64,000 nt of DNA from Asterias rubens (taxonomy: Eukaryota). The stretch covers positions 14,942,001-15,006,000 of the forward strand of contig NC_047068.1 of the NCBI RefSeq assembly GCF_902459465.1, in the 5' to 3' direction. Position numbers and translations under genes: made by a program. Below the pieces are notes generated by a model that saw only the letters and a list, made by a program, of their open reading frames with translations, was not told the origin of the DNA and did not search any database. Numbering within the stretch: the first letter of the stretch is position 1; each line of letters starts with the position of its first letter. Shown piece by piece: positions 5,115-49,150 of the stretch.

Positions 5115-5136
5115 ATTATGAAAAAGATGCACTGTT

Positions 5137-5238
5137 TGGGGTTAGGGGAAAGGTTAGGGTTGGGGTTAAGGGTTAATATAGGGTTAGGGTCAAGGTTTGT
5201 GTTAAAATTAGGGTAAGAGTTAATGTTAGGGTTTAGGT
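5137..5238 (+). repeat. Degenerate telomere-like (TTAGGG) tract
   Basis: Multiple GGTTAGGG/TTAGGGT units, e.g. GGGTTAGGGGAAAGGTTAGGGTTGGGGTTAAGGG and TTAGGGTTTAGGTTAGGGTT. Confidence 0.75.
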
Positions 5239-5277
5239 TAGGGTTGCACTCCCTAACTCTTGGAATTATCAGAAAGA

Positions 5278-6321
5278 TTAAGGAATTTCACGTAATTTCA
5301 TGCTGCTCGTTTTCAGGGGTTCCCTTTTAAAGGTTTCCCACCAAATACCCTGTTCAGCTGAAGATATTGAGCTTATGTCGTGGTATACACCATTTAAGTT
5401 AGAACCCAAACCCAGTGAGCAGTAATTAAACCACCAAGCTCCACGGTGGACTTCCGCACAGTTCTTGTCATGGACATTATCGTTGTCCTTATCCCTAGTT
5501 GTAAATGGCTGGCCAAAGGGCAGAGAGCCACCAGCAGGACCAGTGACTGTACCGAGATTAAGTTTGTAATTCTCACCGATAATCGAAGCATATTGGTACT
5601 TTGCATAAGCTGTTTGACCGTCCCATCCCTCAAGATCTACTCTGAGGTCCCATGACCCTAGAGAGGTCAGGGCCACTAAGATATCATTGCCAAGCCAGTA
5701 CTCACCAGATGGATCACCAAAGCCAGACTTGTACTCGGCCCAGTTGCGGTCAAAGTCTACACTGCCATCCAGTCGCCTCTGAAATACAGTCCATCCCCCA
5801 CCATCAGTCTCCATGTCACAGTATACTTGCAGAGCCTGAGTAGTGCTGCCACCTGGGTAGATGGGATACACTTTACTTTGGGTGTTTCCTGTGTTCAAGA
5901 GCTGCTTACAAGTTCCAAGTTTAGGCAACGGGCTGATCGAATGAGCAGTTGTGGACTCAGTTGATATGTAGTGAGTTGTGTCCTCATCTTCATCAAAGTA
6001 AACACTCCCTTGATCTTCAAGAAAGTCTTGGAGATGCCCAGCTCTTGTTGCATTATTCAGCTCACAGAGTTTCTTACACTCATAGAAGTTGAAAGACTTA
6101 CAGTCCTCATCCATGCTGCAATCTCGTCCACAGATGACATCATTGGCAACAGTTTTCCATTTCTGTACATAGTTTTTGAGGACCTTGTTTTCTGCACTGT
6201 GGTAAAACTGATGTTTTAGCCCACTACACAGACTTCCAAAACTCCTAGCCTGCTTCAACATTAGCAGAGACACCAGTAGACCCACGCAATGAAAATATGT
6301 CATCAAACGTACTTCCCCCAT
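5278..6321 (-). CDS. PAN/apple + fibrinogen-related domain secreted protein, copy 1 (347 aa, minimal stalk)
   Basis: Intronless ORF; first ATG 6321 (alternative 6303); hydrophobic N-terminus; CGRDCSMDEDCKSFNFYECKKLCELN PAN-like motif; FReD motifs VYCDMETDGGGWTVFQRR, EYWLGND, GAWWF, NLNG. Confidence 0.9.
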   Translation of the reverse strand: MGEVRLMTYFHCVGLLVSLLMLKQARSFGSLCSGLKHQFYHSAENKVLKNYVQKWKTVANDVICGRDCSMDEDCKSFNFYECKKLCELNNATRAGHLQDFLEDQGSVYFDEDEDTTHYISTESTTAHSISPLPKLGTCKQLLNTGNTQSKVYPIYPGGSTTQALQVYCDMETDGGGWTVFQRRLDGSVDFDRNWAEYKSGFGDPSGEYWLGNDILVALTSLGSWDLRVDLEGWDGQTAYAKYQYASIIGENYKLNLGTVTGPAGGSLPFGQPFTTRDKDNDNVHDKNCAEVHRGAWWFNYCSLGLGSNLNGVYHDISSISSAEQGIWWETFKREPLKTSSMKLREIP

Positions 6322-9536: not shown

Positions 9537-10249
9537 AGACCGATTGCGCTACCAACGTTTACATGTGATCACGTGACCTATAGTGGGTATAGAAAAACAC
9601 AGCTACACAGTAAAGACATGGGAAAACTCGATTTACCATAAATGGCTGCATTTTCATTAAATAACACTTTTAACTAAAAACATAGCCCTTTTTATAAAGT
9701 TGATTATTGTGACATTGATTTAAATCACTTTTGCTGTTTGATGTTCCCAGTATTCTACTACAAAAGAGGTTTCCTTTGAGAGTATGGTTAGACTACGTAA
9801 ATTACTGAGGTTTGAGCGAGCTCCAGGCCGTGGATTTTGTGTTGTGCATGGCGTGAAGTTGGGCTGTGATAAGGGAGATCGCAAATATTTTGAGGATGAA
9901 TATAAAGGGATTTGCAGCTTCATAATGAGATTTTTATTGAAAATATTGGCAGGAAAATCATTAAAATGAGGGCAGTGTAAAACCACACTTTCCTTGTGAT
10001 GATTTGGAATTATCTATTTGGTGGAACTGTGTTTACCCATTACTGGCATTGTTCAGCCACCGATAAGGTCTCATGTGACAAACTCCTGAGTATTCTTCAG
10101 TGATTTCGAGAATTAAGTATTTTTTTTGAGCCAAAAAATTGCAACAGTAATCATGTCTTTTTAATGCACATTTATATGCAATGCGCCGTGTTTTTTTTTA
10201 CATCCAATACCCACTATAAGTCAACTGACGCACGGAGCGCAATCGGTCT
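9537..10249. mobile_element. 713-bp MITE with AGACCGATTGCGCT TIRs and AT TSD
   Basis: AT-AGACCGATTGCGCT ... AGCGCAATCGGTCT-AT; subterminal TATAGTGGGTAT / ATACCCACTATA also inverted. Confidence 0.8.
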
Positions 10250-12698: not shown

Positions 12699-13035
12699 AA
12701 AGTGCTTATTCACACCCTTAAGGGTGGTGTATCAAAGCGCTCATTGTAAATAAAGCTATTAATTATGAGACCCATTTATGTGGCACCTTACAATGGTTTA
12801 TAAGGTGCGAAGACGCATTAAGCAGCCACTGCCAGACGAATCGGGGCAAACCCCCATTCTGTGCACAATAAGTGCACTTGGTTCTTTTACGTGCATTACA
12901 CAACACACAGGACCAAGCCCTTTATGTCTACTCTGGAGGTTGAATCAATAATGTCTTGCTAATGGACACACACTCTGCTGATCAGATATGCAGAGCTTGA
13001 GTCCAGTGTGCTTGACCGCTTGGCCATGATACAAG
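12699..13035 (-). mobile_element. tRNA-derived SINE
   Basis: Shares head (CACACTCTGCTGA..AGAGCTTGAGTCC) and body (GTGCACT.GGTTCTTTTACG) with 23721-24100 and 54661-54960. Confidence 0.7.
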
Positions 13036-13470: not shown

Positions 13471-13763
13471 AAGGGAATCAATGTGTGGTGAAGAGGTTTT
13501 CAACTAGTGGTTTAATCCCAACGAGGCCTGGTTCTCCTTATAAGGGAATGCTGTGCGCGTATCGCGTGATGTGGCACAACTGTTTCAGCCGTTGCTCTCG
13601 ACCAATAGGAATGAAGAAACTGTCTTAAGCACAGGTGGTGCAAGCTCGCGTGTCACGCCCATGTTCCAACACTTTTTACTGGTTATAAACAAAGGTTTAT
13701 ACACACCCACGTGACGCGCTCTCCACCAATAGGAATAGCGAAACTGTCTGAGGTATTTATGAA
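13471..13763. mobile_element. Interspersed repeat, internally deleted copy of 16952-17481
   Basis: AAGGGAATCAATGTGTGGTGAA ... GAAACTGTCTGAGGTATTTATGAA shared; the central ~240 bp of the longer copy is missing. Confidence 0.8.
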
Positions 13764-14127
13764 CTAAGGTTCAAAACGCAACAAAAAGGGTCACTGAATC
13801 TTTCTTTTTAGGAAAGATACACTGTTGAATCTGAAAAAGGTTTTGATTGATTGTTTAACCTATCAGTATCACATTTAGGACCTATAGCAAAAAGGGAATT
13901 GCAGTTTGATTGACAATTTAAACAATTCCTAAAATGATTAATTGTTTATTAATGTCACAGCTGTGGTTTCTGAAACAACAGTGAACTATACCACAACAAT
14001 AGTTCCCATTTTTACTTAGATTTCCTACTTAACGAGAAGTGGGAAATGAAAAACAAAACTTTCTGAAAATGTTTATTTCTTTTTAAAGAATGTAGAGAAG
14101 TTATGCAGCTATTACTCACTGGCATGT

Positions 14128-15426
14128 TTATCTTAACTTCATACTGCATGACTTGATTGGTTTATCCTTTATCCATTCATTCCACCGGATGCCTCGTCTG
14201 GTAGGGTAGCTCTGCCCATATTCACCATTTAAGTGAGACTTCACTGTGCAGTCTCCGAACCACCAGGCTCCATTAGCTGTGTCTGCACAATTCCCACTGT
14301 CATAGTCATCATTGTCTCTACCCTTTGTTGTGAAATCTTTCTTATTGCTATCACCCATGGAGTCTGCTTGGCCACCGTCATAATTATCGTAACTGAATTG
14401 GTAATTACTACCAGAAATGCTTACTCCACTATACTTTGCATATCCATTAGAACCTGCCCATGATTCAGCATCTACCCGTAGATTTGTATAACCTGCTGAA
14501 GTCAGTGTGACTAAGTTATCATTGCCAAGCCAGAACTCTCTTGATGGGTCACCGAAGCCAGTCTGGTATTCAGTCCAGCTTTTATAAAAGTCTAGAGTGC
14601 CATCAATTCTCTTCTGAAATACAATCCATCCTCCACCATCAGTCTTCATGTCACAGTACACCTTCATACCAGGTGCACTGGTACCCTTTGGGTAGATTGT
14701 GTATACACCACTCTCAGTGTAACCACCAGATTGAAATGCCTTACAGTCTTTGAGTTTCGGCAGGGGGCTTGGAGTTGAAACGAAGGGGGTTGTTGTCTCA
14801 GTGGTTGAGGGTCGAGTTGTGGTCTCAGTTGATGGGGGTCGAGTTGTTGGCTCAGTGGATGTGGGTCGAGTTGTTGTCTCAGTGGTTTTGGGTTGATTTG
14901 TTGTCTTAGTGGTTGAAGGTTGAGTGGTTTGGTCAGATGTGGACTTCACAGAGGATGTTTCCATTTCACAGTAAATCTGCTGACAGTTCACCAACCCATC
15001 AGGGCAGATGGTGTAATATCCACTTTTCTCAATCCCTCCCTGACAACTTTTGAAGCATTCAAATGTTTTATCAACGATGGAACGAATAGGTGTGCCCTCA
15101 TCCATGTCAAAGTACATATATTCTTGATCTTCAACAAAGTCTTCAGTGTGCTCCTTCCTTGTAGAATTGTTCAACTCACAAAACCCTCTACATTTGTAGA
15201 AGTTGAAAGACTTACAGTCTTTCTCCAGACTGCAATCTCGTCCACAGATGACATGATTGGCCACAGTTTTGTTCTTGTACACAAAGTTCTTGAGGACCAT
15301 GTTTTCAGCACTGAAGAACTGGTGTTCCAACTGACCACACTGACTGCCAAACCTTTCCGCCACCATCGATGGAGAAAACCCCCAAACTGTCATGAAATAG
15401 AGGACAGAGAGAATTCGCAGAGCCAT
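14128..15426 (-). CDS. PAN + truncated FReD-N module + mucin stalk + FReD protein, copy 2 (432 aa)
   Basis: ATG 15426, signal peptide MALRILSVLYFMTVWG, PAN Cys motif, ~5-6 degenerate 9-aa Thr/Pro repeats, complete FReD (YCDMKTDGGGWIVFQKR, EFWLGND, GAWWF). Confidence 0.92.
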   Translation of the reverse strand: MALRILSVLYFMTVWGFSPSMVAERFGSQCGQLEHQFFSAENMVLKNFVYKNKTVANHVICGRDCSLEKDCKSFNFYKCRGFCELNNSTRKEHTEDFVEDQEYMYFDMDEGTPIRSIVDKTFECFKSCQGGIEKSGYYTICPDGLVNCQQIYCEMETSSVKSTSDQTTQPSTTKTTNQPKTTETTTRPTSTEPTTRPPSTETTTRPSTTETTTPFVSTPSPLPKLKDCKAFQSGGYTESGVYTIYPKGTSAPGMKVYCDMKTDGGGWIVFQKRIDGTLDFYKSWTEYQTGFGDPSREFWLGNDNLVTLTSAGYTNLRVDAESWAGSNGYAKYSGVSISGSNYQFSYDNYDGGQADSMGDSNKKDFTTKGRDNDDYDSGNCADTANGAWWFGDCTVKSHLNGEYGQSYPTRRGIRWNEWIKDKPIKSCSMKLR

Positions 15427-16951
15427 ATTGAATCAGAGTTGACAACATTCACTTTTCAAAATAAAGGAAAAAGTAAAACTGTGTATCAGCAATCTGTTCT
15501 CAGTAGCTAGATAATTGAAGTACAGTTTATGCTAATGCACACCAGCATGTGGAATTAACATCTGGCTGTAATTGACGTGGACCTTGGTTTTATTACCAAG
15601 AGTAACACTCCAAATGCACTAATTGGTCAAACCTGGAAGTTAATACGTCTTGTCCCACTGATCATCTGATTGGCTAATGGCTTGTGTTTTTTTACCTCAC
15701 CATTTCTGTTCATTTCCCTGTGATTGGCTAACCGGTATATGTCAATACAGCAATGCTCCCAGCTGGTTGACTCCTACATCATGAAGTGACACAAGACCTT
15801 TTTAGCATCACTACTATGACATCAACCATGGATCAGGTTCACGTGTTTAATTAAACAACTCGAAAAAAGCTTCATATGTGCTTTCAGTCACCGAAACGCC
15901 CCCTGGAAAATCACTGGTTGAAAACACCTGGCAAGCACGTCTCTTAGCTGTTTACGCTCCAACTGAAGCTTGTAATGTTTGACCACATAGCCCATTCTCC
16001 CTCATTGATCTTAAGAATGGACGATCAATCAATATTCCATCAACAGACCCTCAGTTTAATGACAGCATTTTCGGTTTTCTCAACCTAGATATGCTGCTAA
16101 ATTTATTTTAAGGCGGACTAAATATTGATTGATGATGAGCAGGGGCTGGTGGTGGAAGTTCACCCAATATGAATCAGTGGATTTAATCTCTGAGCCTTGC
16201 TCTTCTTCAAAAGACAGTAAAAACAAACACCTTGTTCTCTAGTTAATACTTAACCACAACTTCTTGATTTGTGCAATTCATAATCACACTGTGTTAAACC
16301 AGTGTTTCACACAACTGGTTATTGGCATAATGAGGCAAAACATGATTGAGAGATTGACTGTTGCCAGCTTGGTGTTTATTTCCCCCTTGTGGGAGTTTAC
16401 CGAGTGGGAGTTTACCGAGTACCGAGTTCTTGTTTGGAGATCGTCTAAAACAAGCATCAAATCCTCCCCCAACTCCATTTTCTTTGTTTTAAGTTACAGG
16501 AACTCACATGACTTTTAAGAGCACAATTTTCAGGCCCTTGTAGGCATAATTACATGACCGTCCAATTTTTCACAGATTTGTTATTTTATGCATATGGTTG
16601 GGATACACCAAGTGAGGACATTGCATAAGCTCAGCAACCATGTAGCATGTCGCTGTAAACAAGACTATATATGGACAAATTAGTTTATAAGCTATACCTG
16701 TTAAATCAAGACTGATATATTTTCAGCACTACGTGCATGTGTGCGAAGTTGCAATGAAACTAAGATGAATATAAGCATGCGATTAAAGTGCAAAGCGCAA
16801 ACTACTTATACACAATGTATGCTGGTTTAGGGGCCACTTATTCGCTATTTTCCCAAATCGGTCCTAAATCATCCGTGAATACATACCCACGTGATCGGGT
16901 TTTAACCAATCAGAGTCTGGAAACTGTCTAGTGTCTAAGATATTTATTAAT

Positions 16952-17481
16952 AAGGGAATCAATGTGTGGTGAATAGGTTTTCAACTAGTGGTTTAAGCCA
17001 AACGAGGCCTGGTTCTTGATAATTTTTACAGAGACGAAGTCGAGGTAAATTATCAAGAGCCAGGCCATGGCGGGTTTAAACCACTATAGTTAAAAACCGA
17101 TTCAGCCCACTTTGATTCCCATTCATAAATACCTTTTTGGTCAAAAAACATCAACACTGTTTGGTCAAAAAATAAAATAAATGCAAAAATTATTAATTTT
17201 CAATGATTTCTTTCAACACAACACCCCTCCAGCTATGAAATGGTAAGGCCCTCGGCCTGATCGGGTTAACAACTCCTTATAAGGGAATGATGTGCGCGTC
17301 GTGCATATCGCGTGATGTGGCACAACTGTCCCGGCCGTTGCGCTCGACCAATAGGAATGAAGAAACTGTCTTATAATCACAGGTGCAAGCTCGAGTGTCA
17401 TAAACAAAGGTTTATACAAACCCACGTGACGCTCTCTCAACCATTAGGAATAGCGAAACTGTCTGAGGTATTTATGAATAA
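16952..17481. mobile_element. Interspersed repeat with ~165-bp imperfect hairpin (16954-17120)
   Basis: Arms GGGAATCAA...GGCCTGGTTCTTGATAATTT and AAATTATCAAGAGCCAGGCC...TTGATTCCC; second copy at 13471. Confidence 0.8.
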
Positions 17482-17596
17482 TAAATAAAGAATATTCATT
17501 TTGGATAATAACCAAAAATTAATATTGTTATTAACACGCTGTTACAATTATCACCCTGTTCACTATTATTATTTAAATGAAGAGATGTACTCACTA

Positions 17597-19006
17597 TTAA
17601 GGTTTACGTAGTATCATACTGCATGCTTTGATGGGTTGATTCCATTCGTACCATACAATGCCTCGTTTGACACCAAGGTTCTGCTCATATTCACCATTTA
17701 AGTGAGACTTCACTGTGCAGTCTTTGAACCACCAGGCTCCATGAGTTTGTTCTGCACAATTCTCATCGCTCGCCTCATCATTGTCTTTATCCTTTGTTGT
17801 GAACTTTTTGCCTTTGTTGTCATTAAGAGAGTTTTTTGCAGGTGCCCCTAATTTGTAATTGGTATAAGTGAATATATATTCACTTCCAGTAACGCTTACA
17901 CCATCATACTCTACATATCCTGTTTCACCATCTGATTCAAGAACCACCCGTAGCTTGGTAAAACCTGCTGAGGTCAGGGCCACCAAGTTCTCATTGCCAA
18001 GCCAGTACTCACCAGATGGATCACCAAAGCCAGACTTGTACTCATCCCAGTTGCGGTCAAAGTCTACACTGCCATTCAGTCGCCTCTGAAATACAATCCA
18101 TCCCCTATCATCAGTCACCATGTCGCAGTACACCCGCATATCAGCTGCACTGGATCCACTTGGGTAGACTGTGTATACGTTACTCCTGCTATAACCAGTA
18201 TCTCGAAACTCTTGGCAGCTGCTGAGTTTAGGCAGGGGGCTCTGAGCTGAAAAGAAGGGAGTTGTTGGCTCAGTGGATGAGGGTTGAGCTGTTGGCTCAG
18301 TGGATGAGGGTCGAGTTGTTGGCTCAGTGGATGAGGGTTGAGTTGTTGGCTCAGTGGATGAGGGTTGAGTTGTTGGCTCAGTGGATGAGGGTTGAGTTGT
18401 TGGCTCAGTGGATGAGGGTTGAGTTGTTGGCTCAGTGGATGAGGGTTGAGTTGTTGGCTTAGTGGATGAGGGTTGAGTTGTTGGCTCAGTGGATGAGGGT
18501 TGAGTGGTCTGGTCTGTTATAGATGTCTTCACAGAGGATGTTTCCATTTCACAGTAAATCTGCTGACAGTTCACCAACCCATCAGGGCAGATGGTGTAAT
18601 ATCCACTTTTCTCAATCCCTCCCTGACAACTTTTGAAGCATTCAAAAGTTTTATCAACGGTGGAACGAATAGGTGTGCCCTCATCCATGTCAAAGTACAA
18701 ACTTTCTTGATCTTCAACAAAGTCTTCAGTGTGTTCCGTCCTTGTAGAATTGTTCAACTCACAAAACCCTCTACATTTGTAGAAGTTGAAAGACTTACAG
18801 TCTTTCTCCAGACCGCAATCCCGTCCACAGATGACATGATTGGCCACAGTTTTGTTCTTGTACACAAAGTTCTTGAGGACCATGTTTTCAGCACTGAAGA
18901 ACTGGTGTTTTAACTGACCACACTGACTGCCAAACCATTCCGCCATCGATGGAGAAAACCCCCAAATTGTCATGAAATAGAGGACAGAGAGAATTTGCAG
19001 ATCCAT
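17597..19006 (-). CDS. PAN + truncated FReD-N + mucin stalk + FReD protein, copy 3 (469 aa)
   Basis: First ATG 19006 (the ORF-track start at 19039 is TTG); signal peptide; PAN; ~9 EPTTQPSST repeats; complete FReD. Confidence 0.92.
   Translation of the reverse strand: MDLQILSVLYFMTIWGFSPSMAEWFGSQCGQLKHQFFSAENMVLKNFVYKNKTVANHVICGRDCGLEKDCKSFNFYKCRGFCELNNSTRTEHTEDFVEDQESLYFDMDEGTPIRSTVDKTFECFKSCQGGIEKSGYYTICPDGLVNCQQIYCEMETSSVKTSITDQTTQPSSTEPTTQPSSTKPTTQPSSTEPTTQPSSTEPTTQPSSTEPTTQPSSTEPTTQPSSTEPTTRPSSTEPTAQPSSTEPTTPFFSAQSPLPKLSSCQEFRDTGYSRSNVYTVYPSGSSAADMRVYCDMVTDDRGWIVFQRRLNGSVDFDRNWDEYKSGFGDPSGEYWLGNENLVALTSAGFTKLRVVLESDGETGYVEYDGVSVTGSEYIFTYTNYKLGAPAKNSLNDNKGKKFTTKDKDNDEASDENCAEQTHGAWWFKDCTVKSHLNGEYEQNLGVKRGIVWYEWNQPIKACSMILRKP
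18262..18512 (-). repeat. Coding 27-bp minisatellite (~9 units) in copy 3
   Basis: GAGTTGTTGGCTCAGTGGATGAGGGTT repeated. Confidence 0.95.
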
Positions 19007-19359
19007 ATTGAAACAGAGTTGACAACATTCACTCTTCAAGAAACAATGATGACATTAAATTGCACTCAGCAATTTTTGTTTGTTGAAGTGTTAGTTTGAG
19101 CACACGGCAAAGTCTAGAATCGTTTCCAACTTGCAGTTCTAGTATGTGGTCGTTGTTTTCCACCAGTGGTTTCTTTCCAAACACACTAGTTGGTCATATA
19201 TCTCTGAGACGATGCAACTTGTCCGATCAGTCACCTGATTGGTTAGTATTTTATGGTTTCATGTGACCATTTCGATGACTTATCCAGTGATTGGTCTTCA
19301 TGTAATTGTTCTAGCTAGGTGACTGGTACATCATTCCATCACTCCCACAGAGGCTGTTT

Positions 19360-19746
19360 TTAAAGGCAGTGGACACTATTGGTAATTACTCAAAATAATT
19401 ATTGGCATAAAACCTTTCTTGGTGACGAGTAATGGGGAGAGGTTGATGGTATAAAACATTGTGAGAAACGGCTCCCTCTGAAGTGCCATAGTTTTCGAGA
19501 AAGAAGTAATTTTCCACGAATGTCATTTCTAGACCTCAGGTTTAGAACTTGAGGTCTCGAAATCAACCATCTAAACGCACACAACTTCGTGTGACAGGGG
19601 TGTTTTTTTCTTTCATTATTATCTCGCAACATCGATGACCGATTGAGCTCAAATTTTCACAGGTTTGTTATTTTATGCATATGTTGAGATACACCAACTG
19701 TGAAGGCTAGTCTTTGACAATTACCAATAGTGTCCACTGCCTTTAA
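19360..19746 (+). mobile_element. TTAA MITE family A, full length
   Basis: Perfect 28-bp inverted ends including TTAA: TTAAAGGCAGTGGACACTATTGGTAATT / AATTACCAATAGTGTCCACTGCCTTTAA. Confidence 0.92.
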
Positions 19747-21450
19747 TGTCACTCGATCAATTTTAAACCAGGCACCGCTTCCAAATCAAGGACTTCTTAT
19801 GTGCTTCAGTCACCGAAACAGCCCATCGTCAGGAAATCACTCATTAAAAATGCCTGCAATGTACATCTTTTGGCAATATACCCTCCAACTGGACAAAGCT
19901 TAATTGCATCGACTGATCCTATGCCTTATTGTGTCTCACGTTGATCTATGAATAGACGATCAATATTTCATGGACAGATCATTAGTTTATCATTAGGTTT
20001 AAAGGTTTACTCAACCAAAAAGGACTGATAACCTTTTCCAAATCTCTTTTGCCTTTGAATTCGACTGGAAACCAGATATTGAAGTCATTACCCATGTATA
20101 GGTTCTATTGAGTTAATTGCAAAAGAAGAACATTTTAAAAATTGTAGTTAATTTCACCCCAGTTTCTGAAATCAAGGGTTTAATATCCACACTCTTCCAT
20201 TATTATACGTTGTTTTTCACTACTGGATAACTTTATATCTTTAAACTAAGAACTACTAAAGAAACTTGTAGACCCTGTGCCCAACGCGCAATGCACTTAG
20301 TCATAATTATCCGCTGACACTGTTCTGCTTCTTTACAGATCAACTTTAACGAAATCACTCTAACTAACTTGTCAACTTATCTGTTTTTGAATTTTTTATT
20401 TTTTGGTAATTATTTGGTCACAAGAGTGAAAGTTTCCTATAGTTTTTTTTTAAATTAAATTTAATCAGAAAAACCAGCCCCCGTCCTTATTCAATTATTA
20501 AACTTGTGATTTTTCCCTGCCGTTAAAAGGCGTCCTACTTGGTTCACAGCAGAGACTCATAAAAAATTAAAGTGAAATCAACAATAAAGGACCAGTGACC
20601 TCAGTAAACCAGCGTAAAAGCAGTCTGTGTTGTAACCTTAATTAAATAAACCACAACATGGACTGGATGAAGGTTGTTTTATCTTAATTGCTGTGCATTT
20701 TCCATTTTCTTGTTTGGACCGTGACTGAAGCGTGACGTCACCGTACTGTTCTGATTCCTAGGGTCCTCAAGGCCTTGTATATAACTCAAAATATTGTCCT
20801 TGCGTGTCACTGATCAATAAAAATGTGATTGATTTTGTGTGACATTATAAAACCATTTTGATTGGGTTTTATTACTTGATTAGATGTAATCAATTTATTA
20901 CACACTTGCTAACCTTTCTTTACCAAAGAACAATCATTTCGTTCAATTAGATCTTTTTAAGGTAAACCTTTCCTGCAGGTTTCATGTAGTTGTGATTTAT
21001 TTCCATAATAAGTAAGATGAATATATCCATCAAGTCCTTAAAATGATAGTCTACATTCGTACCAATCTAGGACCAATTACATAATGCTGCTTCAACAATC
21101 AAGCACCGAGTAAAATGCCTGTGACTTTTTGTTCACAGAGCTCGGGAAAGCACTGAGTGTACAGTTCTTACTACATACATCGGTGTATATGGGTGAAACC
21201 AAAATTAATAATCTTTATCCCCGATGCAAATTTCCATCTTGTAATTGTTTTTAAACCCTCCAGCTTCTAGCTAGGTGACTTGTTAATCGTTCCCACAGAG
21301 GCTGTCCTTTATGTCACTGTGGTATTTATACTATTTTTTGTTTTATACATTTTTTACAGATCCAGCAGCTCATTCTGTGTATATTGGTCGCTATGGGTTT
21401 AGTATTCCAGTTGCTACATGTATAATTTGTCCGATTTGTTTGGCTTTCAT

Positions 21451-21783
21451 TTAAAACCATTGGACCATTTCGGTAAACAGTATTGTCCAAGGCCCACACT
21501 TCGTGTATCACAACTTATATATAAAATAACAAACCTGTGAAAATTTAGGCTCAATTGGTCATCGGCGTCGGTAGAAAATAACGGGAAAACCCACCCTTGT
21601 TTCCGCACGTTGCGCCGTGTCATGACATGTGTTTAATTGTTTAAATGTTTTCTCAAAAAGTAAAGCATGTCATGGAATTCAAGAGAAGTCTTTCACCATT
21701 ACCTTCTGTAAACCCTGTAAGTTATTTGTAAATCTGTGAACTTTTAATTTTGTTTCTGTTCCGAAAGTGTCCAATGGCTTTTA
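21451..21783 (+). mobile_element. TTAA MITE family B
   Basis: TTAAAACCATTGGACCATTTCGG ... CCGAAAGTGTCCAATGGCTT; body matches 41146-41518. Confidence 0.85.
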
Positions 21784-22541
21784 TTTAGCAGATGTTCTTT
21801 ACAAACACAAGTTCTTTGAGTAGCTACTGTCGTAAAAACAAATTCAATATTCCAGACCCCAATCACATTATTAAAAAAAGTATAATAAATTGATTCTTAT
21901 ATAGCACTTTATCACATGAAGGGATCAGGATGGCTATTCATTTGTGCTTCAGTCACCAAAACGACTCATCCTGAGAAAAAAAAAAAGAAAAAAAAATTCC
22001 TCCAGGCACATCTTTTTTGCAATATATGTATGCTTCAGCTGGACAAAGCTTAATTGCAGTGTCTGATCCTATGCCTTATTGTGTTGCTCAATTTCAAAAG
22101 AATAGAGGATCAATATTCATTAGATTATGAGGTATTCTCATGCATAAACTCATAATAATTTTGTTCTTCTAATTTTCTTATAACTTTTCAATCTGCAGAC
22201 CAGATAATAAAATTATTACCCGTATATGGGCTCGCTATTCTAAATTGCAAAAGAAGAAAAGTTAAACACTGGTACTCAATTGTGAGGTTTATCACCGAGT
22301 CTGTGTGTGTGCAATAATTGAGCGATAACTCAAGAAGGACTTGGCATATCAGCACAAAACTTGATTTTGAATCGGTTTTGGGATCCCCCAGAAGCCTCTT
22401 ATTTTTTTTGACCCCCTCAATAATTATCAAGGTAAAACTGCTATTGTGATGGATGCAAAGTGGGACCCTTTGTTGGGTTTCCGGTCAAATGCAATTTGAC
22501 AGGATTCTTTTCCACTCTGTTCTCTTTATGAATAGCTAGCA

Positions 22542-22918
22542 TTAAAGGCACTGTACACGTTTTGTAATTGTCAAAGACCAGTGTTCTCACTTGGTGTATC
22601 CCATCATTAGCATAAAATAACAAGCCTGTGAAGATTTGGGCTCAATCGGTCATCGAAGTTGCGAGAAAATAATGAAAGAAAAAACACCCTTGTTTGATGA
22701 ATTTGTGTGCTTTCAGATAGGAATAAAAGACTTCTAGCTAGAAGTCTTTTATTATTTAAGTGAGAAATTACCTCTTTCTCAAAAACTATGTTACTTCAGA
22801 AGGGAGTCGTTTCCCACAATGTTTCATACTATCAACAGCTCTCCATTGCTTGTTACCAAGTCAGTTTTTAAAATAATATTTGTTTTGAGTAATTACCAAA
22901 CATGTACCTTCCCTTTAA
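22542..22918 (-). mobile_element. TTAA MITE family A, inverted
   Basis: TTAAAGGCACTGTACACG ... CATGTACCTTCCCTTTAA; reverse complement of the 7831 copy. Confidence 0.88.
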
Positions 22919-23720
22919 GAGCAGGCATCTCTCTGAGAAATCTAATAATGCAATCAAGGACATAAAAACCCAATCTAGCATTCTGTTGATCTGCTAGAAA
23001 GTCAGGATTGTTTTCCTATCTATTTAATAATCCTGGCTTCTCATATAGCACTCAGGTTCGTCACTCAGTGACGCTCATGAAGCTAGTTGAAACATTGAGT
23101 CAAATTAAGAAATCGTTCCGCGGTAGTGAAGTTTATAACAAGAAGTCCCCTAGATCCGCTAAAGTAGTAGTCCCAGCCATATTTCTACCTTGCAATAGTT
23201 GCAGGACAGTTCTTTTCAGAGCTGAGAAAATCTACTCCAGATCAGTGGAATATAAGTTCTCAAAAGAACTTAATTTACCAGGCAAGAAAATACACACATG
23301 ATGTAAAACCCTAAACCAAATATATATTATATATACCATAAAATGCTTCATATCCCATAAAATAAATTTAGGTCTTGAAACTGAAACTGCTCTGAACTGA
23401 AGAGTTTGTCAAAATTTGTACATCTGTGACGACAATGGTGGTGTTTCATGGTGGTACAAACTTGAGCACTATCTTAGCACAGATATCTAAAAACTATTTA
23501 TACAACTATTTATTTTAAATGTTATTATTTTATGTGTATAATTAAAACAGATCCAGCAGCTCAATCTGTGTATATTGGTTGCTATGGGTATAGTATCTAA
23601 ACTGTTCAGTTGGTCCGACTTTCAGAAGTTATTCAAACACAGTGGTCAAGTTTCTAGCAGATGTTCTTTGAGTAGTTACTGTCATGAAAAGACCCCATTC
23701 ACAGTTTAAAAAATACTTTC

Positions 23721-24100
23721 TTATATATAGCGCTTTATCACACCCCTAGGGGCATATCAAAGCACTCAGTGCTTTTTCCTACATGGATTTTGGGCTTCGT
23801 TTTGTAGTATGAGACCTATTCCATTTATAGCACCATGTAATAGTTTACAAGGTGCGGTGGCGCAATATCCTGCCGATCAAATCTAGAACACTGGGGAGAG
23901 TCCCTTATCTTTATGATGGGTGCACTGGGTTCTTTTACGCACAATACATAACACACGGTACCTACGGCTTTACACCCCATCCAAAGGATGCAGCAACAAC
24001 GGACACAAGAAAGCAAGTGTCAAGGACACATGTGTCATGACTGGGACTCGAACCCACACTCTGCTGACCAGAAACACCAGAGCTTGAGTCACGACATGCC
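23721..24100 (-). mobile_element. tRNA-derived SINE
   Basis: Pol III B box GTTCGAGTCC on the minus strand at 24044-24053; body shared with 12699 and 54661 copies. Confidence 0.75.
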
Positions 24101-24294
24101 ACGATAAATGAAATAAAAAACATACACAAATGCATCTTTTCCATTCTATTTGTAAATTACAATCGGCCTTCAGCGGTAAACCAAAACTACCTCAATTTTC
24201 ATTGCTCAAACATAATTTGCTGGAAACCTAAACCAGACTCTCGATCAGCCAAGTCAAAAGAAAAATAGCATGGGACAGAAGGATGTACTCACTA

Positions 24295-26454
24295 TTAAGG
24301 TTTACGTAGTTTCATACAGCATACTTTGATGGGTTGATTCCATTTGTACCATACAATGCCTCGTCTGCCAACAGGGTTTTGCTCATATTCACCATTTAGG
24401 TGAGACTTGACTGTGCAGTCTTTGAACCACCAGGCTCCATGAGTTTGTTCTGCACAATTCTCGCCATTATCGTTGTCGTCCTTTGTTTGAAATGGATTAT
24501 TCTTGTTGTCATTTAGAGAGTCATCTGCATTGCCACCTATGAAATTGTCATAACTGAATATATATTCAATACCAGTAATGCGAACTCCACTATACTCTGC
24601 ATGTCCTTCTTCACCTGTCCATGTTGTAAGATCTACTCGTAGATTGGTATAACCTGCTGAGGTAAGTTCCACTAAGTTATCATTGCCAAGCCAGAATTCT
24701 CCTGATAGGTCACCGAAGCCAGTCTGGTATTCTGTCCAGTTGCGATAAAAGTCTACACTGCCATCAATTCGCCTCTGAAATACAATCAATCCCCTACCAT
24801 CAGTCTCCATGTCACAGTACACCTTCATACCACTGGGTCCACTTGGGTAGATTGTGTATACATTACTCTTGCTATAACCAGCATCTCGAAACTCCTGACA
24901 GCTGCTGAATTTAGGCAGGGGGCTCTGAGTTGAAAAGAAGTGAGTTGTTGGATCACTGGTCAATTGATGAGTTGTTGGCTCAGTGGATGAGGGTTGAGTT
25001 GTTGGCTCAGTGGATGAGGGTTGAGTTGTTGGCTCAGTGGATGAGGGTTGAGTTGTTGGCTCAGTGGATGAGGGTTGAGTTGTTGGCTCAGTGGATGAGG
25101 GTCGAGTTGTTGGCTCAGTGGATGAGGGTCGAGTTGTTGGCTCAGTGGATGAGGGTTGAGTTGTTGGCTCAGTGGATGAGGGTTGAGTTGTTGGCTCAGT
25201 GGATGTGGGTTGAATTGTTGGCTCAGTGGATGAGGGTTGAGTTATTGGCTCAGTGGATGAGGGTTGAGTTGTTGGCTCAGTGGTTGAGGGTTGAGTTGTT
25301 GGCTCAGTGGATGAGGGTTGAGTTGTTGGCTCACTGGATGTGGGTTGAGTTGTTGGCTCAGTGGATGTGGGTTGAGTTGTTGGCTCAGTGGATGAGGGTT
25401 GAGTTGTTGGCTCAGTGGATGAGGGTTGAGTTGTTGGCTCACTGGATGTGGGTTGAGTTGTTGGCTCAGTGGATGAGGGTTGAGTTGTTGGCTCAGTGGA
25501 TGAGGGTTGAGTTGTTGGCTCAGGGGTTGAGGGTTGAGTTGTTGGCTCAGTGGATGAGGGTTGAGTTGTTGGCTCAGTGGATGAGGGTTGAGTTGTTGGC
25601 TTAGTGGATGAGGGTTGAGTTGTTGGCTCAGTGGATGAGGGTTGAGTTGTTGGCTCACTGGATGAGGGTTGAGTTGTTGGCTCACTGGATGAGGGGTGAA
25701 TTGTTGGTTCAGTGGATAAGGGTTGAGTTGTTGGTTCAGTGGATGAGGGGTTAGTTGTTGGCTCAGTGGATGAGGGTTGAGTTGTTGGCTCAGTGGATGA
25801 GGGTTGAGTTGTTGGCTCAGTGGTTGAGGGTTGAGTTGTTGGCTCAGTGGATGAGGGTAGAGTTTTTGGCTCAGTTGATGAGGGTTGAGTTGTTTGCACA
25901 TTGGATGAGGGGTGAGTTGTTGGTTCAGTGGATAAGGGTTGAGTTGTTGGTTCAGTGGATAAGGGTCGAGTTGTTGGCTCAGTGGATGAGGGTTGAGTTG
26001 TTGGCTCAGTAGATAATGGTCGGGTGCTTGGCTGAACCAAAAGTTCTTTACAACTTTTGAAGAGAGTGAGAGAGTTTTTAGCCACTGAGAAGATGGGTGT
26101 GTCCTCATCTGCATCAAAGTGTACACTCCCTTGATCTTCAAGAAAGTCTCGAGGATGCTCAGCTCTTGATGCATTATTCAGCTCACAGAGTTTCTTACAT
26201 TCATAGAAGTTGAAAGACTTACAGTCCTCATCCATGCTGCAATCTCGTCCACAGATGACATAATTAAGTGTGGTTTTAGTCTTGTACTCAGAATTCTTAA
26301 GAACTCTGTTTTCTGCACCAATCAATTGTTTTTTCAGTGAACCACATTTCCCTCTGTCAATTCCAAAGCTCTTCACCGATAATGAGTTGATCAATGCCAG
26401 TATAAAAATAACATTCAACTGTAAAACACAGATCATCAACACCCGTTGAATCAT
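24295..26454 (-). CDS. PAN + long mucin stalk + FReD protein, copy 4 (719 aa)
   Basis: First ATG 26454 (26478 is GTG); hydrophobic leader; PAN motif; ~40 9-aa repeats; complete FReD ending KLRKP. Confidence 0.92.
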   Translation of the reverse strand: MIQRVLMICVLQLNVIFILALINSLSVKSFGIDRGKCGSLKKQLIGAENRVLKNSEYKTKTTLNYVICGRDCSMDEDCKSFNFYECKKLCELNNASRAEHPRDFLEDQGSVHFDADEDTPIFSVAKNSLTLFKSCKELLVQPSTRPLSTEPTTQPSSTEPTTRPLSTEPTTQPLSTEPTTHPSSNVQTTQPSSTEPKTLPSSTEPTTQPSTTEPTTQPSSTEPTTQPSSTEPTTNPSSTEPTTQPLSTEPTIHPSSSEPTTQPSSSEPTTQPSSTEPTTQPSSTKPTTQPSSTEPTTQPSSTEPTTQPSTPEPTTQPSSTEPTTQPSSTEPTTQPTSSEPTTQPSSTEPTTQPSSTEPTTQPTSTEPTTQPTSSEPTTQPSSTEPTTQPSTTEPTTQPSSTEPITQPSSTEPTIQPTSTEPTTQPSSTEPTTQPSSTEPTTRPSSTEPTTRPSSTEPTTQPSSTEPTTQPSSTEPTTQPSSTEPTTQPSSTEPTTHQLTSDPTTHFFSTQSPLPKFSSCQEFRDAGYSKSNVYTIYPSGPSGMKVYCDMETDGRGLIVFQRRIDGSVDFYRNWTEYQTGFGDLSGEFWLGNDNLVELTSAGYTNLRVDLTTWTGEEGHAEYSGVRITGIEYIFSYDNFIGGNADDSLNDNKNNPFQTKDDNDNGENCAEQTHGAWWFKDCTVKSHLNGEYEQNPVGRRGIVWYKWNQPIKVCCMKLRKP
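24943..26030 (-). repeat. Coding 27-bp minisatellite (~40 units) in copy 4
   Basis: Same 27-bp unit as copies 3 and 6; ~1090 bp with no frameshift. Confidence 0.95.
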
Positions 26455-32999: not shown

Positions 33000-34379
33000 T
33001 TAGATGAAAGTATTCAGAGCTTTTACTTCATCGGTAATTGTTTTTTCACGTATTTTCATGTTACATGTTTTGAGACGGGCTTTTACAAAGGTATCCCACC
33101 AAATACCCTGGTAAAGCATTATGCTTGCTGGAAAATATTTGCCATTTAAGTTTGACCTCATGCAGGAATTATACCACCAGGGTCCCTTGAAAGTTATTGC
33201 ACAGTTACCATTTTGTCTTTCATCATGATCTCTATCATTTGTAGTAAAGGGTTGCCCATTGTGAATGTCAAGAGAGTCCCCAGCAGTACCTGTGTATTCA
33301 CCCACTGTAAGTTTGTAATTCTCACCAGTAATCGTAAATGATTGGTACTTTGCATAAGCTGTTTGACCGTCCCATACCTCAAGATCAATTCTGAGGTCCC
33401 ATGACCCATTAGAGGTCAGGCCCACTAAGATATCATTGCCAAGCCAGTACTCACCAGATGGATCACCAAAGCCAGACTTGTACTCAGCCCAGTTGCGGTC
33501 AAAGTCTACACTGCCATCCAGTCGCCTCTGAAATACAGTCCATCCCCCACCATCAGTCTCCATGTCACAGTATACTTGCAGAGCCTGAGTAGCGCTGCCA
33601 CCTGGGTAGATGGGATACACTTTACTTTGGGTGTTTCCTGCGTTGAAGAGCTGCTTACAAGTTCCAGGTTTAGGCATTGGGATCTTGCTTGATGAGGGTT
33701 GAGCTGTTGGCTCAGTTGATATGGGTTGAGTTGTTGGCTCAGTGGTTGAGGGTTGAGTTGTTGGCTCAGTGGTTGAGGGTGGAGTTGTTGGCTCAGTGGA
33801 TGAGGGTTGAGTTGTTGGCTCAGTAGATGAGGGTTGAGTTGTTGGCTCAGTGGATGAGGGTTGAGTTGTTGGCTCAGTGGATGAGGGTTGAGTTGTTGGC
33901 TCAGTGGATGAGGGTTGAGTTATTGGCTCAGTGGATGATGGTTGAGTTGTTGGCTCAGTGGATGAGGGTTGAGTTGTTGGCTGATCCAAAAGTTCTTTAC
34001 AACTTTTGAAGAGAGTGAAAGAGTTATCAGCCACTGAGTAGATGGGAGTGTCCCTATCTGCATCAAAGTATACACTCCCTTGATCTTCAAGAAAATCTTG
34101 AGGATGCTCAGCTCTTGTTGCATTATTCAGCTCACAGAGTTTGTTACATTCTTTGAAGTTGAAAGACTTACAGTCCTCATCCATGCTGCAATCTCGTCCA
34201 CAGATGACATAATTGGCAACAGTTTTCTGTTTGTGTGCTAGGTTTTGAAGAACTCTGTTTTCTGCACTGTGTAGGTGTTCAGTTTCACCACACTGAAACT
34301 CTATAGCATTGGTTATCAGCATAGAAAACACACAAAAACATGCTGAGTATAAAATGACTGCCCATCCTTTTGGGGCCAT
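33000..34379 (-). CDS. PAN + mucin stalk + FReD protein, copy 6 (459 aa)
   Basis: ATG 34379, signal peptide, PAN motif, ~11 repeats, complete FReD (GPWWYNSCMRSNLNG). Confidence 0.93.
   Translation of the reverse strand: MAPKGWAVILYSACFCVFSMLITNAIEFQCGETEHLHSAENRVLQNLAHKQKTVANYVICGRDCSMDEDCKSFNFKECNKLCELNNATRAEHPQDFLEDQGSVYFDADRDTPIYSVADNSFTLFKSCKELLDQPTTQPSSTEPTTQPSSTEPITQPSSTEPTTQPSSTEPTTQPSSTEPTTQPSSTEPTTQPSSTEPTTPPSTTEPTTQPSTTEPTTQPISTEPTAQPSSSKIPMPKPGTCKQLFNAGNTQSKVYPIYPGGSATQALQVYCDMETDGGGWTVFQRRLDGSVDFDRNWAEYKSGFGDPSGEYWLGNDILVGLTSNGSWDLRIDLEVWDGQTAYAKYQSFTITGENYKLTVGEYTGTAGDSLDIHNGQPFTTNDRDHDERQNGNCAITFKGPWWYNSCMRSNLNGKYFPASIMLYQGIWWDTFVKARLKTCNMKIREKTITDEVKALNTFI
33688..33982 (-). 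repeat. Coding 27-bp minisatellite (~11 units) in copy 6
   Basis: Same unit as copies 3 and 4. Confidence 0.95.
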
Positions 34380-48895: not shown

Positions 48896-49150
48896 CTTTG
48901 AAATGCTAGGTGTCAGCAGTTACCAGGTAATTTTGCATTATTTACAGCATTCTGAGCATGCGCACATTAATGAGAACAATGGATTTACTTGGTAAGTCTG
49001 CTGCCACCTATCGTCCCAAAATTGACAGTTTGTCAGCAGTTACCAGGTAATTTTGCATTGTTTACAGCATTCTGAGCATGCGCACATTAATGAGAACAAT
49101 GGATTTACTTGGTAAGTCTGCTGCCACCTATCGTCCCAAAATTGACTGTT
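48896..49150. mobile_element. Small TIR element whose 120-bp core is tandemly duplicated
   Basis: 48911-49030 and 49031-49150 nearly identical; arms TGCTAGGTGTCAGCAG.TTACC and GGTAAGTCTGCTGCCACCTA are imperfect inverted repeats. Confidence 0.75.

What the first reader, a model, noticed from the sequence alone, without database searches (positions are those of the whole stretch)
14128..26454. Copy 3 is a chimera: 5' half from copy 2, 3' half from copy 4, in the position unequal crossover predicts
Seen: 18510-19035 is nearly identical to 14930-15455 (leader, PAN, Cys module). The copy 3 stalk variants (KPTTQ, EPTTR) and FReD ends (CQEFRD.GYS.SNVYT; NCAEQTHGAWWFKDCTVKSHLNGEYEQN...WNQPIK...LRKP, plus GATGTACTCACTA past the stop) match copy 4. 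A crossover between misaligned genes 2 and 4 would put exactly this hybrid between them. The breakpoint falls in or next to the 27-bp array, suggesting the minisatellite is the recombination substrate that swaps PAN and FReD heads.
Basis: partly seen in the sequence, partly recalled or inferred. Interest (0 to 1): 0.72.

Follow-up and report, generated by a model that had tools for sequence, protein, structure and literature searches.

The report
Mosaic sea-star lectin gene, by conversion
One gene in a tandem cluster of sea-star PAN–mucin stalk–fibrinogen lectin genes really is a patchwork of its neighbours, but the patches were most likely pasted into an old gene by repeated gene conversion confined to the coding exon, not made by one unequal crossover; this is a normal way for immune-type gene families to evolve.

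Summary
Copy 3 (c3, minus strand, CDS 17597-19006) is 95-96% identical to copy 2 (c2) from the exon start to the stalk array. After the array its nearest copy is copy 4 (c4). Site patterns are head 117:5 and tail 36:93 (p = 8e-32).

The Asterias amurensis orthologous locus is collinear at about 94% and has the same c4-c3-c2 order and the same mosaic. So the mosaic is old and is not a misassembly.

The single c2 x c4 unequal crossover is not supported.
- Flanks: the c2/c3 upstream flank carries 37% fixed paralogue-specific differences, against 1.4% inside the exon. c3/c4 similarity stops about 15 nt past the splice donor that follows the stop codon.
- Tail: the FReD tail is itself a patchwork. 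The two end tracts are c4-like (about 3% fixed differences). A 163-bp tract is c1/c6-like (92.6%). A 194-bp core is equally far from c2 and c4 (dS about 0.5, matching the flank).

Best reading: an old c3 locus overwritten by at least 3-4 exon-confined interlocus gene-conversion tracts.

Head/tail junctions sit at or inside the hypervariable 27-bp array in c3, in c6 and in an A. amurensis-only gene, c0 (c4 head, c2 tail). This is an ordinary mechanism in an uncharacterised lectin family.

The parts
17595..19031 (-). Copy 3 (c3) single coding exon. CDS is 17597-19006 (469 aa): signal leader, PAN, FReD-fragment 'Cys module', 9-unit stalk, FReD. AG acceptor at 19033-19032; GT donor at 17594-17593, two nt after the stop.
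   Evidence: ORF and Pfam PAN_1 + Fibrinogen_C. A Logan contig in run X3 joins 17595 to the c2 equivalent of 19031, and X3 covers the exon only.
18527..19042 (-). Head tract of c3 (5'UTR part of the exon, leader, PAN, Cys module), homogenised with c2 (14944-15459).
   Evidence: 96.3% identity, dS 0.05. Only 7 fixed paralogue-specific sites in 516 nt, against 37% in the flank just upstream.
18527..18664 (-). 'Cys module': a truncated N-terminal FReD fragment (Pfam Fibrinogen_C profile positions 4-39) ahead of the stalk. Present in c2 and c3 only. c4, c6 and c0 keep just 'FKSCKELL'.
   Evidence: hmmscan E = 0.001, 19.3 bits, the only family hit. BLASTP against c3's own FReD start gives E = 1e-4.
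18257..18505 (-). c3 stalk: 9 x 27 bp (PSSTEPTTQ), a minisatellite drawn from the unit pool shared with c4 and c6. The c2 array is a different type.
   Evidence: TRF 9.1 copies at 97%. Unit tables. Length differs between orthologues: 9 units here, 7 in L031, 22 in A. amurensis.
18133..18256 (-). Tail tract T1 (linker plus FReD start), c4-like.
   Evidence: 87.9% identity to c4 against 69.5% to c2. 4 fixed c3/c4 differences in 132 nt.
17970..18132 (-). Tail tract T2, c1/c6-like patch.
   Evidence: 92.6% identity to c1 and c6, 83.4% to c4. dS 0.09-0.13 against more than 1 in neighbouring tracts. c3=c1 vs c3=c4 sites are 19:4 here and 27:147 elsewhere (p = 1.5e-10).
17776..17969 (-). Tail tract T3, c3's own old backbone.
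   Evidence: 73% identity to c4 and 70% to c2. dS 0.47-0.51 to both. The tree is an unresolved trichotomy. No better match anywhere in the genome.
17580..17775 (-). Tail tract T4 (FReD end, stop, splice donor plus about 11 nt), c4-like. Includes the shared GATGTACTCACTA at 17584.
   Evidence: 91.2% identity to c4. 5 fixed differences in 187 nt. Similarity collapses at about 17580.
14128..15426 (-). Copy 2 (c2) CDS, the partner of the c3 head. Its own array type lies at 14789-14929.
24295..26454 (-). Copy 4 (c4) CDS, the partner of c3 tracts T1 and T4. It has a 39-40 unit array at 24968-26014 (7 units in A. amurensis).
19043..20031 (-). c3 upstream flank. It is old paralogy with the c2 upstream flank (15427-16100) at 61-66% identity, with conserved CCAAT boxes. 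It is interrupted by a young MITE at 19359-19746.
   Evidence: blastn E = 1.6e-15 and 2e-22. The flank is unique in the genome. MITE copies are 97% identical genome-wide and the insertion is absent in A. amurensis.
16942..17489 (.). Dispersed repeat (MITE-like) 108 nt downstream of c3. It is the source of a spurious c2/c3 3'-flank 'homology'.
   Evidence: Thousands of candidate copies at 85-91% identity.
5278..6321 (-). Copy 1 (c1): array-less PAN-FReD gene. It belongs to the donor lineage (with c6) of the c3 T2 patch, and is itself a mosaic.
33000..34379 (-). Copy 6 (c6): c4-like PAN core and array joined to a c1-like FReD start. This is a second junction at an array edge.

Best explanation
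The window holds a tandem cluster of six genes on the minus strand of an Asterias genome (417.6 Mb). I call them c1 to c6. Each encodes a secreted PAN/Apple domain, a Ser/Thr/Pro stalk and a fibrinogen-related domain (FReD). Each has one coding exon, with an AG acceptor just before the start codon and a GT donor just after the stop.

Copy 3 is an old paralogue. Its flanks and the 194-bp core of its FReD are about 0.5 substitutions per site away from both c2 and c4. Several separate interlocus (ectopic) gene-conversion tracts were later written over its exon:
(a) exon start to just before the stalk array, exchanged with c2;
(b) the FReD start, next to the array, exchanged with c4;
(c) the FReD end up to the splice donor, exchanged with c4;
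(d) a 163-bp tract from the c1/c6 lineage.
The array itself exchanges units with the c4 and c6 arrays.

Tracts stop where homology stops: at the exon/intron borders, and at the array, where c2-type and c3/c4-type repeats differ in sequence and number.

Shown: the mosaic, its tract limits, the old flanks, and its presence before the A. rubens / A. amurensis split.

Inferred: gene conversion as the process, the direction of each transfer, and whether the array starts exchanges (breakage of an unstable minisatellite) or only ends them.
For: Mosaic: identity profile. Site patterns are 117:5 in the head and 36:93 in the tail (p = 8e-32), with the MaxChi break at the head/tail join. In segment trees the head joins c2 (100/100), and the AU test rejects c3+c4 for the head (p = 1.4e-4).

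Not selection: synonymous divergence shows the same contrast. Head c3-c2 dS is 0.05 and c3-c4 is 2.2. Tail c3-c4 dS runs from 0.13 (T4) to 0.47 (T3). T2 c3-c1/c6 dS is 0.09-0.13.

Confined to the exon: upstream of the acceptor, c2 and c3 have 109 fixed paralogue-specific differences in about 297 nt. Inside the exon there are 7 in 516 nt, and the switch happens within about 10 nt. c3/c4 similarity ends about 15 nt past the donor. The upstream flank is single-copy.

Several events: fixed c3/c4 differences are 3%, 12%, 25% and 2.7% in T1 to T4 (chi-square p = 8e-13).

Old and real: A. amurensis L032 is collinear through c5-c4-c3-c2 at about 94%, intergenic DNA included. Am_c3 groups with Ar_c3 in every tail segment. 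Source-sample contigs cross the flank/exon joins with no mismatch.

Family-wide habit: c6 is a c4-like PAN core and array with a c1-like FReD start. c1 has a c4-like PAN core. A. amurensis c0 has a c4 head and a c2 tail, its break is inside the array, and its homology is again limited to the exon.
Against: No donor direction could be established. Conversion is inferred from its pattern, not observed.

The ages of the head tract (c2-c3) and of T1+T4 (c3-c4) do not differ significantly on fixed sites: 7/516 against 9/319 (p = 0.19). Raw A. rubens differences do differ: 3.2% against 8.8% (p = 7e-4). So one compound event for head, T1 and T4 cannot be ruled out.

Topological support for c3+c4 in T1+T4 is only 81/87, and the AU test does not reject c3+c2 there (p = 0.20).

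T2 is the most conserved part of the FReD family-wide (c1-c4 dS is 0.42 there, against about 1.1 elsewhere). Part of the T2 signal could therefore be slow evolution rather than transfer.
Confidence: 0.72

Rival explanations
1. A single, fairly recent unequal crossover between misaligned c2 and c4, with the break in the array, created c3 as a new hybrid gene between them.
For: The position and polarity fit: the 5' part comes from the downstream gene and the 3' part from the upstream gene. The junction lies at the array. The fixed-site ages of the head and of T1+T4 are not significantly different.
Against: A crossover would duplicate the whole intergenic region. The c2/c3 upstream flank is 37% different against 1.4% in the exon. 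The c3 and c4 3' flanks are unalignable. T3 carries 25% fixed differences from c4, and T2 is c1/c6-like. Apparent flank matches are transposable elements.
Confidence: 0.03
2. An ancient unequal crossover between c2 and c4 (about 0.5 substitutions per site ago) gave birth to the c3 locus. Later conversions then produced the high-identity tracts seen today.
For: The c3 upstream flank is paralogous to the c2 upstream flank at K of about 0.5-0.6, matching dS of T3 (0.47-0.51). The best T3 tree pairs c3 with c4, though at only 68/69 support. The gene order fits.
Against: No c3/c4 3'-flank paralogy was found, although c2/c3 flank paralogy of the same supposed age is detectable. Only about 100-200 nt of non-repeat flank is available there. 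T3 is a trichotomy, and the AU test cannot tell c3+c4 from c3+c2 (p = 0.23-0.27). Plain tandem duplication of a c2-like gene fits equally well.
Confidence: 0.15
3. One compound repair event. A double-strand break in the unstable c3 array was repaired with the two broken ends copying from different neighbours: c2 for the head side and c4 for the tail side. This set the junction at the array in one step. T2/T3 and T4 would reflect tract discontinuity or later events.
For: Both the head tract and T1 abut the array. Their fixed-site ages are similar. The arrays are hypervariable in length between orthologues: c3 has 9 against 22 units, c4 has 40 against 7, and c2 has 4 against 9.
Against: T4 is separated from T1 by 357 bp of non-c4 sequence, so at least two more events are still needed. 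Raw divergence of the head (3.2%) is lower than that of T1+T4 (8.8%) (p = 7e-4). There is no direct evidence of breakage.
Confidence: 0.08
4. Assembly artefact: c3 is a collapsed or chimeric join of c2-like and c4-like reads across the repeat.
For: The c2 and c3 heads are near-identical and the array is repetitive. One metagenome contig (L031) does join the c2 upstream flank to a c3 body.
Against: The independent chromosome-level A. amurensis assembly has the same gene, with its own flanks, at the same place. Source-sample contigs cross 18880-19350 and 17458-17715 with no mismatch. Other samples (X3, X4, X5) hold c3-specific T3 and flank sequence.
Confidence: 0.01

Closest known systems
Interlocus gene conversion in tandem immune-type lectin or receptor families, e.g. 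Biomphalaria FREPs (IgSF + fibrinogen domain; PMC7588048, PMC12074976) and sea-urchin Sp185/333 (PMC3342357)
   Same: Clustered paralogues carrying a FReD or other recognition module. Mosaic sequences are shared patchwise between copies. Repeats lie beside or inside the genes. dN/dS is high: 0.5-0.7 here.
   Different: The N-terminal partner is a PAN/Apple domain plus a mucin-like 9-aa stalk, not IgSF. Everything seen here is germline and conserved between two species. No somatic diversification was tested or seen. The papers were listed by search but not read in full, so the comparison rests on their abstracts and on general knowledge.
Hybrid genes made by unequal crossover (haemoglobin Lepore / anti-Lepore, red-green opsin hybrids); established knowledge
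   Same: A gene whose 5' part matches one tandem neighbour and whose 3' part matches the other, lying between them with the expected polarity.
   Different: Such hybrids carry the parents' flanks and duplicate or delete the intergenic DNA. Here the flanks are old (37% against 1.4%) or unalignable, and the 3' part is itself a patchwork.
Ficolins / MFAP4 / angiopoietin-like FReD proteins (the names NCBI gives the A. amurensis orthologues)
   Same: A C-terminal Fibrinogen_C domain covering nearly the full profile (E = 1e-50 to 1e-67). The protein is secreted.
   Different: There is no collagen-like or coiled-coil region. Instead there is a PAN domain, a truncated extra FReD start in c2 and c3, and a hypervariable PSSTEPTTQ stalk.
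Minisatellite-associated recombination and conversion (human hypervariable minisatellites; mucin VNTR genes); established knowledge
   Same: The 27-bp coding array changes copy number several-fold between sister species and shares units between paralogues. Exchange junctions lie at its edges or inside it.
   Different: No meiotic hotspot, polarity gradient or break site has been shown. The array may simply be a homology barrier that ends conversion tracts.

Membership tests
Fibrinogen-related domain (FReD) proteins, Pfam PF00147 | Fibrinogen_C domain above the gathering score | tested here: met
   c1-c4 and c6 score 169-225 bits against a cut-off of 22, covering profile positions 3-219 of 221.
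PAN/Apple domain proteins, Pfam PF00024 | PAN_1 domain above the gathering score | tested here: met
   25.9-31.1 bits against a cut-off of 21.4 in all five intact copies.
Ficolin | Collagen-like (Gly-X-Y) region N-terminal to the FReD | tested here: not met
   No collagen family hit was found. The region before the FReD is PAN plus PSSTEPTTQ repeats.
FREP in the Biomphalaria sense | One or two IgSF domains N-terminal to the FReD | tested here: not met
   Pfam finds only PAN_1 and Fibrinogen_C.
Lepore-type hybrid gene from unequal crossover | The hybrid lies between the parents, with its 5' part from the downstream parent and its 3' part from the upstream parent | tested here: met
   The order is c4-c3-c2 in the direction of transcription, in both species.
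Lepore-type hybrid gene from unequal crossover | The flanks and the two intergenic regions are co-duplicated at the same divergence as the hybrid's halves | tested here: not met
   The 5' flank has 37% fixed differences against 1.4% in the exon. The 3' flank is unalignable. Other flank matches are transposable elements.
Lepore-type hybrid gene from unequal crossover | Each half is uniformly derived from one parent, with a single breakpoint | tested here: not met
   The tail has four tracts with 3%, 12%, 25% and 2.7% fixed differences from c4 (p = 8e-13). One tract is c1/c6-like.
Interlocus (ectopic) gene conversion mosaic | Short high-identity tracts set in older, diverged paralogous DNA, with sharp ends and low synonymous divergence inside | tested here: met
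   dS is 0.05 in the head against flank K of about 0.5-0.6. The switch occurs within about 10 nt at the acceptor and about 15 nt past the donor.
Interlocus (ectopic) gene conversion mosaic | Non-reciprocal transfer with an identifiable donor and direction | not testable with these tools
   This needs outgroup species with c2, c3 and c4 orthologues, or pedigree or sperm-typing data.
Minisatellite recombination hotspot | Exchange junctions concentrated at the array | tested here: inconclusive
   Three junctions lie at or in arrays: c3 at the 5' edge, c6 at the 3' edge, and A. amurensis c0 inside. Other breaks (T1/T2, T2/T3, T3/T4 and the exon ends) do not. No null model was tested.

The most novel reading that the evidence does not exclude
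The hypervariable 27-bp stalk array could be an active germline recombination initiator. In that reading it repeatedly re-pairs PAN heads with FReD tails across the cluster (A-head/c2-tail, A-head/c3-tail, c4-head/c4-tail, c4-head/c2-tail in A. amurensis, c4-like head/c1-like tail in c6). This would give sea stars a combinatorial lectin repertoire that differs between species and perhaps between individuals.
Probability: 0.2. Interest if true: 0.65.

Novelty: new member of a known kind. Interest (0 to 1): 0.38.

Why it matters
It turns a tempting 'hybrid gene by crossover' story into a tested picture of how this family evolves. The picture is exon-confined conversion among tandem PAN-stalk-FReD genes, with head/tail combinations that differ between sister species. 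One example is a 5-kb c0 gene present only in A. amurensis.

The family looks like a secreted recognition-lectin set, with a signal leader, an O-glycosylation-type stalk and a FReD. No paper describing it turned up in the two full-text searches I ran. A. amurensis gene models splice the stalk out as an intron.

If the array really drives the exchange, the cluster would be a tractable echinoderm case of repeat-mediated domain re-assortment in innate immunity. As it stands, the mechanism is ordinary.

Tried and rejected
1. Apparent c2/c3 3'-flank homology (13534-13763 vs 17273-17478, 78%) and c2/c4 3'-flank homology (12684-13003 vs 23712-24090). Both are dispersed repeats with thousands of copies. 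They are not locus paralogy and were dropped.
2. L031 (ENA ERZ1764478, MEGAHIT contig) joins the c2 upstream flank (96%) to a c3 body (98%). It could be a recombinant haplotype. However, the likely same metagenome (X5) also holds c3's own upstream flank, and the c2 and c3 heads are near-identical. I treat it as probably a chimeric assembly and did not use it as evidence.
3. P0005 (ENA ERZ23498375) has a c1 head, a c2-like tail and a c3 C-terminal end. No DNA was obtainable, so it stays unverified.
4. My first AU test on T2 was ill-posed, because the forced split is already in the unrooted tree. The T2 claim rests on dS and site patterns instead.
5. I searched for a better donor elsewhere in the genome. 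A second PAN-FReD cluster about 1 Mb away and scattered FReD genes match at only 70-85%, and only in conserved parts.
6. The search of earlier findings returned nothing for this place.
7. Two literature searches found no paper on this gene family.
8. RNA-templated (cDNA) conversion was considered because tracts end at splice sites. I think it less likely, because similarity runs about 10-15 nt into both introns.


Full report
WHAT IS THERE. The window is G000:C7:14942001-15006000 of a 417.6-Mb genome. Its closest named relative is Asterias amurensis. On the minus strand lie six paralogous genes, which I call c1 to c6:
- c1: 5278-6321
- c2: 14128-15426
- c3: 17597-19006
- c4: 24295-26454
- c5: 28315-29027, a pseudogene with a frameshift and an internal FReD deletion
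- c6: 33000-34379

Each intact copy encodes a leader, a PAN_1 domain and a full Fibrinogen_C domain. In c2-c6 the two domains are separated by a 27-bp (PSSTEPTTQ-type) array of 4 to 40 units.

In c2 and c3 a 'Cys module' precedes the array. It is a truncated FReD start, matching Pfam profile positions 4-39 (E = 0.001, the only family hit; BLASTP against c3's own FReD start gives E = 1e-4). c4, c6 and c0 keep only 'FKSCKELL' of it.

Each gene is one coding exon. A polypyrimidine tract and AG lie just upstream, at 19033-19032 in c3. GTGAGTA follows two nt after the stop. A Logan contig in run X3 joins 17595 directly to the c2 equivalent of 19031. X3 covers the exon but not the flanks. This is most simply a spliced c3-to-c2 read-through RNA, and it suggests that c3 is expressed.

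CHECK OF THE OBSERVATION. 18510-19035 vs 14930-15455 is 94.9% identical, and the exon part is 96.3% identical. GATGTACTCACTA occurs only at 17584 and 24282. Sliding identity and per-segment identity give the following for c3:
- head: 95-97% to c2, 42-70% to c4
- T1 (18238-18133): 87.9% to c4
- T2 (18132-17970): 92.6% to c1 and c6, 83.4% to c4
- T3 (17969-17776): 73% to c4, 70% to c2
- T4 (17775-17600): 91.2% to c4

For the triplet c3|c2|c4, sites supporting c2 vs c4 are 117:5 in the head and 36:93 in the tail (Fisher 8e-32). MaxChi places the break exactly between head and tail, and 0 of 2000 permutations reach the observed value. A. amurensis gives the same counts, 115:5 and 34:103.

In trees the head joins c2 (100/100), and the AU test rejects c3+c4 for the head (p = 1.4e-4). 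The exception is that the '3' half' is not uniformly c4-like.

NOT AN ARTEFACT, AND OLD. The A. amurensis locus L032 (CP134962.1) is collinear with window 28.3-9.5 kb at about 92-96%, intergenic DNA included. It has the same order c5-c4-c3-c2 and open reading frames through every array. Am_c3 groups with Ar_c3 in all four tail segments. The whole mosaic therefore predates the species split. Contigs from the probable source sample cross 18880-19350 and 17458-17715 without a mismatch.

WHY NOT ONE UNEQUAL CROSSOVER.

(i) Flanks. A crossover between misaligned c2 and c4 would duplicate the intergenic DNA. The two spacers should then be paralogous at the same divergence as the exon.
- In a four-sequence alignment (c2 and c3 from both species), the 315 nt upstream of the acceptor carry 109 fixed paralogue-specific differences in about 297 aligned nt. 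Conserved CCAAT boxes show true but old paralogy, with K of about 0.5-0.6.
- The 516-nt head tract carries only 7 such differences. The change occurs within about 10 nt of the acceptor.
- That flank is single-copy in the genome.
- On the 3' side, c3/c4 similarity ends about 15 nt past the donor. The rest is unalignable although it is well conserved between orthologues.
- Every other flank match proved to be a transposable element.

(ii) The tail is itself a patchwork.
- Fixed c3/c4 differences are 4/132, 19/163, 48/191 and 5/187 in T1 to T4 (chi-square p = 8e-13).
- T2 matches c1/c6 (dS 0.09-0.13, against more than 1 in adjacent tracts). Site patterns are 19:4 there against 27:147 elsewhere (p = 1.5e-10).
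- T3 is an unresolved c2/c3/c4 trichotomy with dS 0.47-0.51 to both, the same depth as the flank. It has no better match anywhere in the genome.

(iii) Synonymous divergence shows that the contrasts are not due to selection.

The simplest history is therefore an old c3 locus (flanks plus T3) overwritten by several exon-confined conversion tracts: the head with c2, T1 and T4 with c4, and T2 from the c1/c6 lineage.

A caveat on timing. Fixed-site ages of the head (1.4%) and of T1+T4 (2.8%) do not differ significantly (p = 0.19). Raw A. rubens divergence does differ (3.2% against 8.8%, p = 7e-4). So I cannot exclude that some tracts were laid down together, for example by repair of a break in the array using two donors. 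An ancient crossover as the birth of the locus also cannot be excluded. Neither is supported.

THE ARRAY.
- The c2-like tract of c3 ends about 20 nt before the array.
- The c3 array is not c2-type. It uses the canonical unit shared, identical at DNA level, by c3, c4 and c6 in both species. Two single-nucleotide variants are shared with c4 and one with c6.
- Copy number differs several-fold between orthologues: c3 has 9 against 22 units (7 in L031), c4 has 40 against 7, and c2 has 4 against 9.
- Two more head/tail junctions coincide with arrays. A. rubens c6 has a c4-like PAN core and array joined to a c1-like FReD start. A. amurensis c0 has a c4 head (dS 0.06-0.09) and a c2 tail (dS 0.11), with the switch inside the array and homology again limited to the exon.
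- c0 lies in a 5-kb segment that is absent from A. rubens, and it is not between c4 and c2. It too is not a simple crossover product.

The data do not say whether the array starts exchanges or merely ends conversion tracts, because repeat type and number differ between copies.

COMPARISON AND NOVELTY. The proteins are FReD and PAN family members. They are not ficolins, because they have no collagen region. They are not snail-type FREPs, because they have no IgSF domain. The evolutionary behaviour is patchwise conversion in a tandem recognition-lectin cluster with repeats and high dN/dS. This is the known pattern of FREPs and Sp185/333, seen here in a family that no paper from my two full-text searches describes. 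I rate it a new member of a known kind, of moderate interest.

Noticed in passing
L033:9518-14497 (A. amurensis) vs window about 618-628: A. amurensis has an extra gene, c0 (L033 about 10073-11271). It has a c4-type head and a c2-type FReD, with the junction inside a 4-unit array. It sits in a 5-kb segment absent from the A. rubens assembly, downstream of c1.
   Followed up: partly
window 17595 / c2 equivalent of 19031 (about 15451): A contig in run X3 joins the end of the c3 exon (GT donor two nt after the stop) to the start of the c2 exon (AG acceptor). This looks like a c3-to-c2 read-through splice. No separate 3'UTR exon for c3 was found.
   Followed up: partly
window 18527-18664 and 14944-15081: The 'Cys module' of c2 and c3 is a truncated duplicate of the FReD N-terminus (profile positions 4-39). 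The stalk is therefore sandwiched between a FReD fragment and a full FReD. This may be a footprint of an older intragenic or intergenic unequal exchange.
   Followed up: partly
L032:10001-11761, 13939-15372, 3959-5227: NCBI gene models of the A. amurensis orthologues (339-350 aa) splice out the Cys module and array as an 'intron', although the ORFs are continuous (422-586 aa). This is probably an annotation artefact caused by the repeats.
   Followed up: partly
window 19359-19746: A young 388-bp MITE with 28-nt terminal inverted repeats. Copies are 96-97% identical genome-wide. It is inserted upstream of c3 in A. rubens only.
   Followed up: partly
window 28315-29027: c5 is a pseudogene, with a frameshift between PAN and stalk and an internal FReD deletion. 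It shares both flanks with c6 (83-85%), so c5 and c6 arose by a segmental duplication. A. amurensis annotates a 466-aa product at the orthologous place.
   Followed up: no
window 5139-5245: An interstitial telomere-like (TTAGGG)n tract of about 18 degenerate units lies directly downstream of the c1 stop codon. 41-bp and 104-bp tandem repeats follow at 4563-5082.
   Followed up: no
G000:C7:13909558-13975989: A second cluster of at least 8 PAN-FReD genes lies about 1 Mb away. The PAN-FReD spacing there is too short for a stalk array, as in c1.
   Followed up: no
L031 (ENA ERZ1764478 k141_1675020): This metagenome contig has the c2 upstream flank and c2-like start, then a c3 body with 7 stalk units and the c3 3' flank. 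It is either a chimeric short-read assembly or a real recombinant haplotype.
   Followed up: partly
P0005 (ENA ERZ23498375, contig of 2531 bp): The predicted protein has a c1 head, a c2-type FReD and a c3-type C-terminal 30 residues. It is another possible mosaic allele or gene, but no DNA was retrievable.
   Followed up: partly
window 48911-49150: A perfect-looking 120-bp x 2 tandem duplication (98% identical), unrelated to the gene cluster.
   Followed up: no
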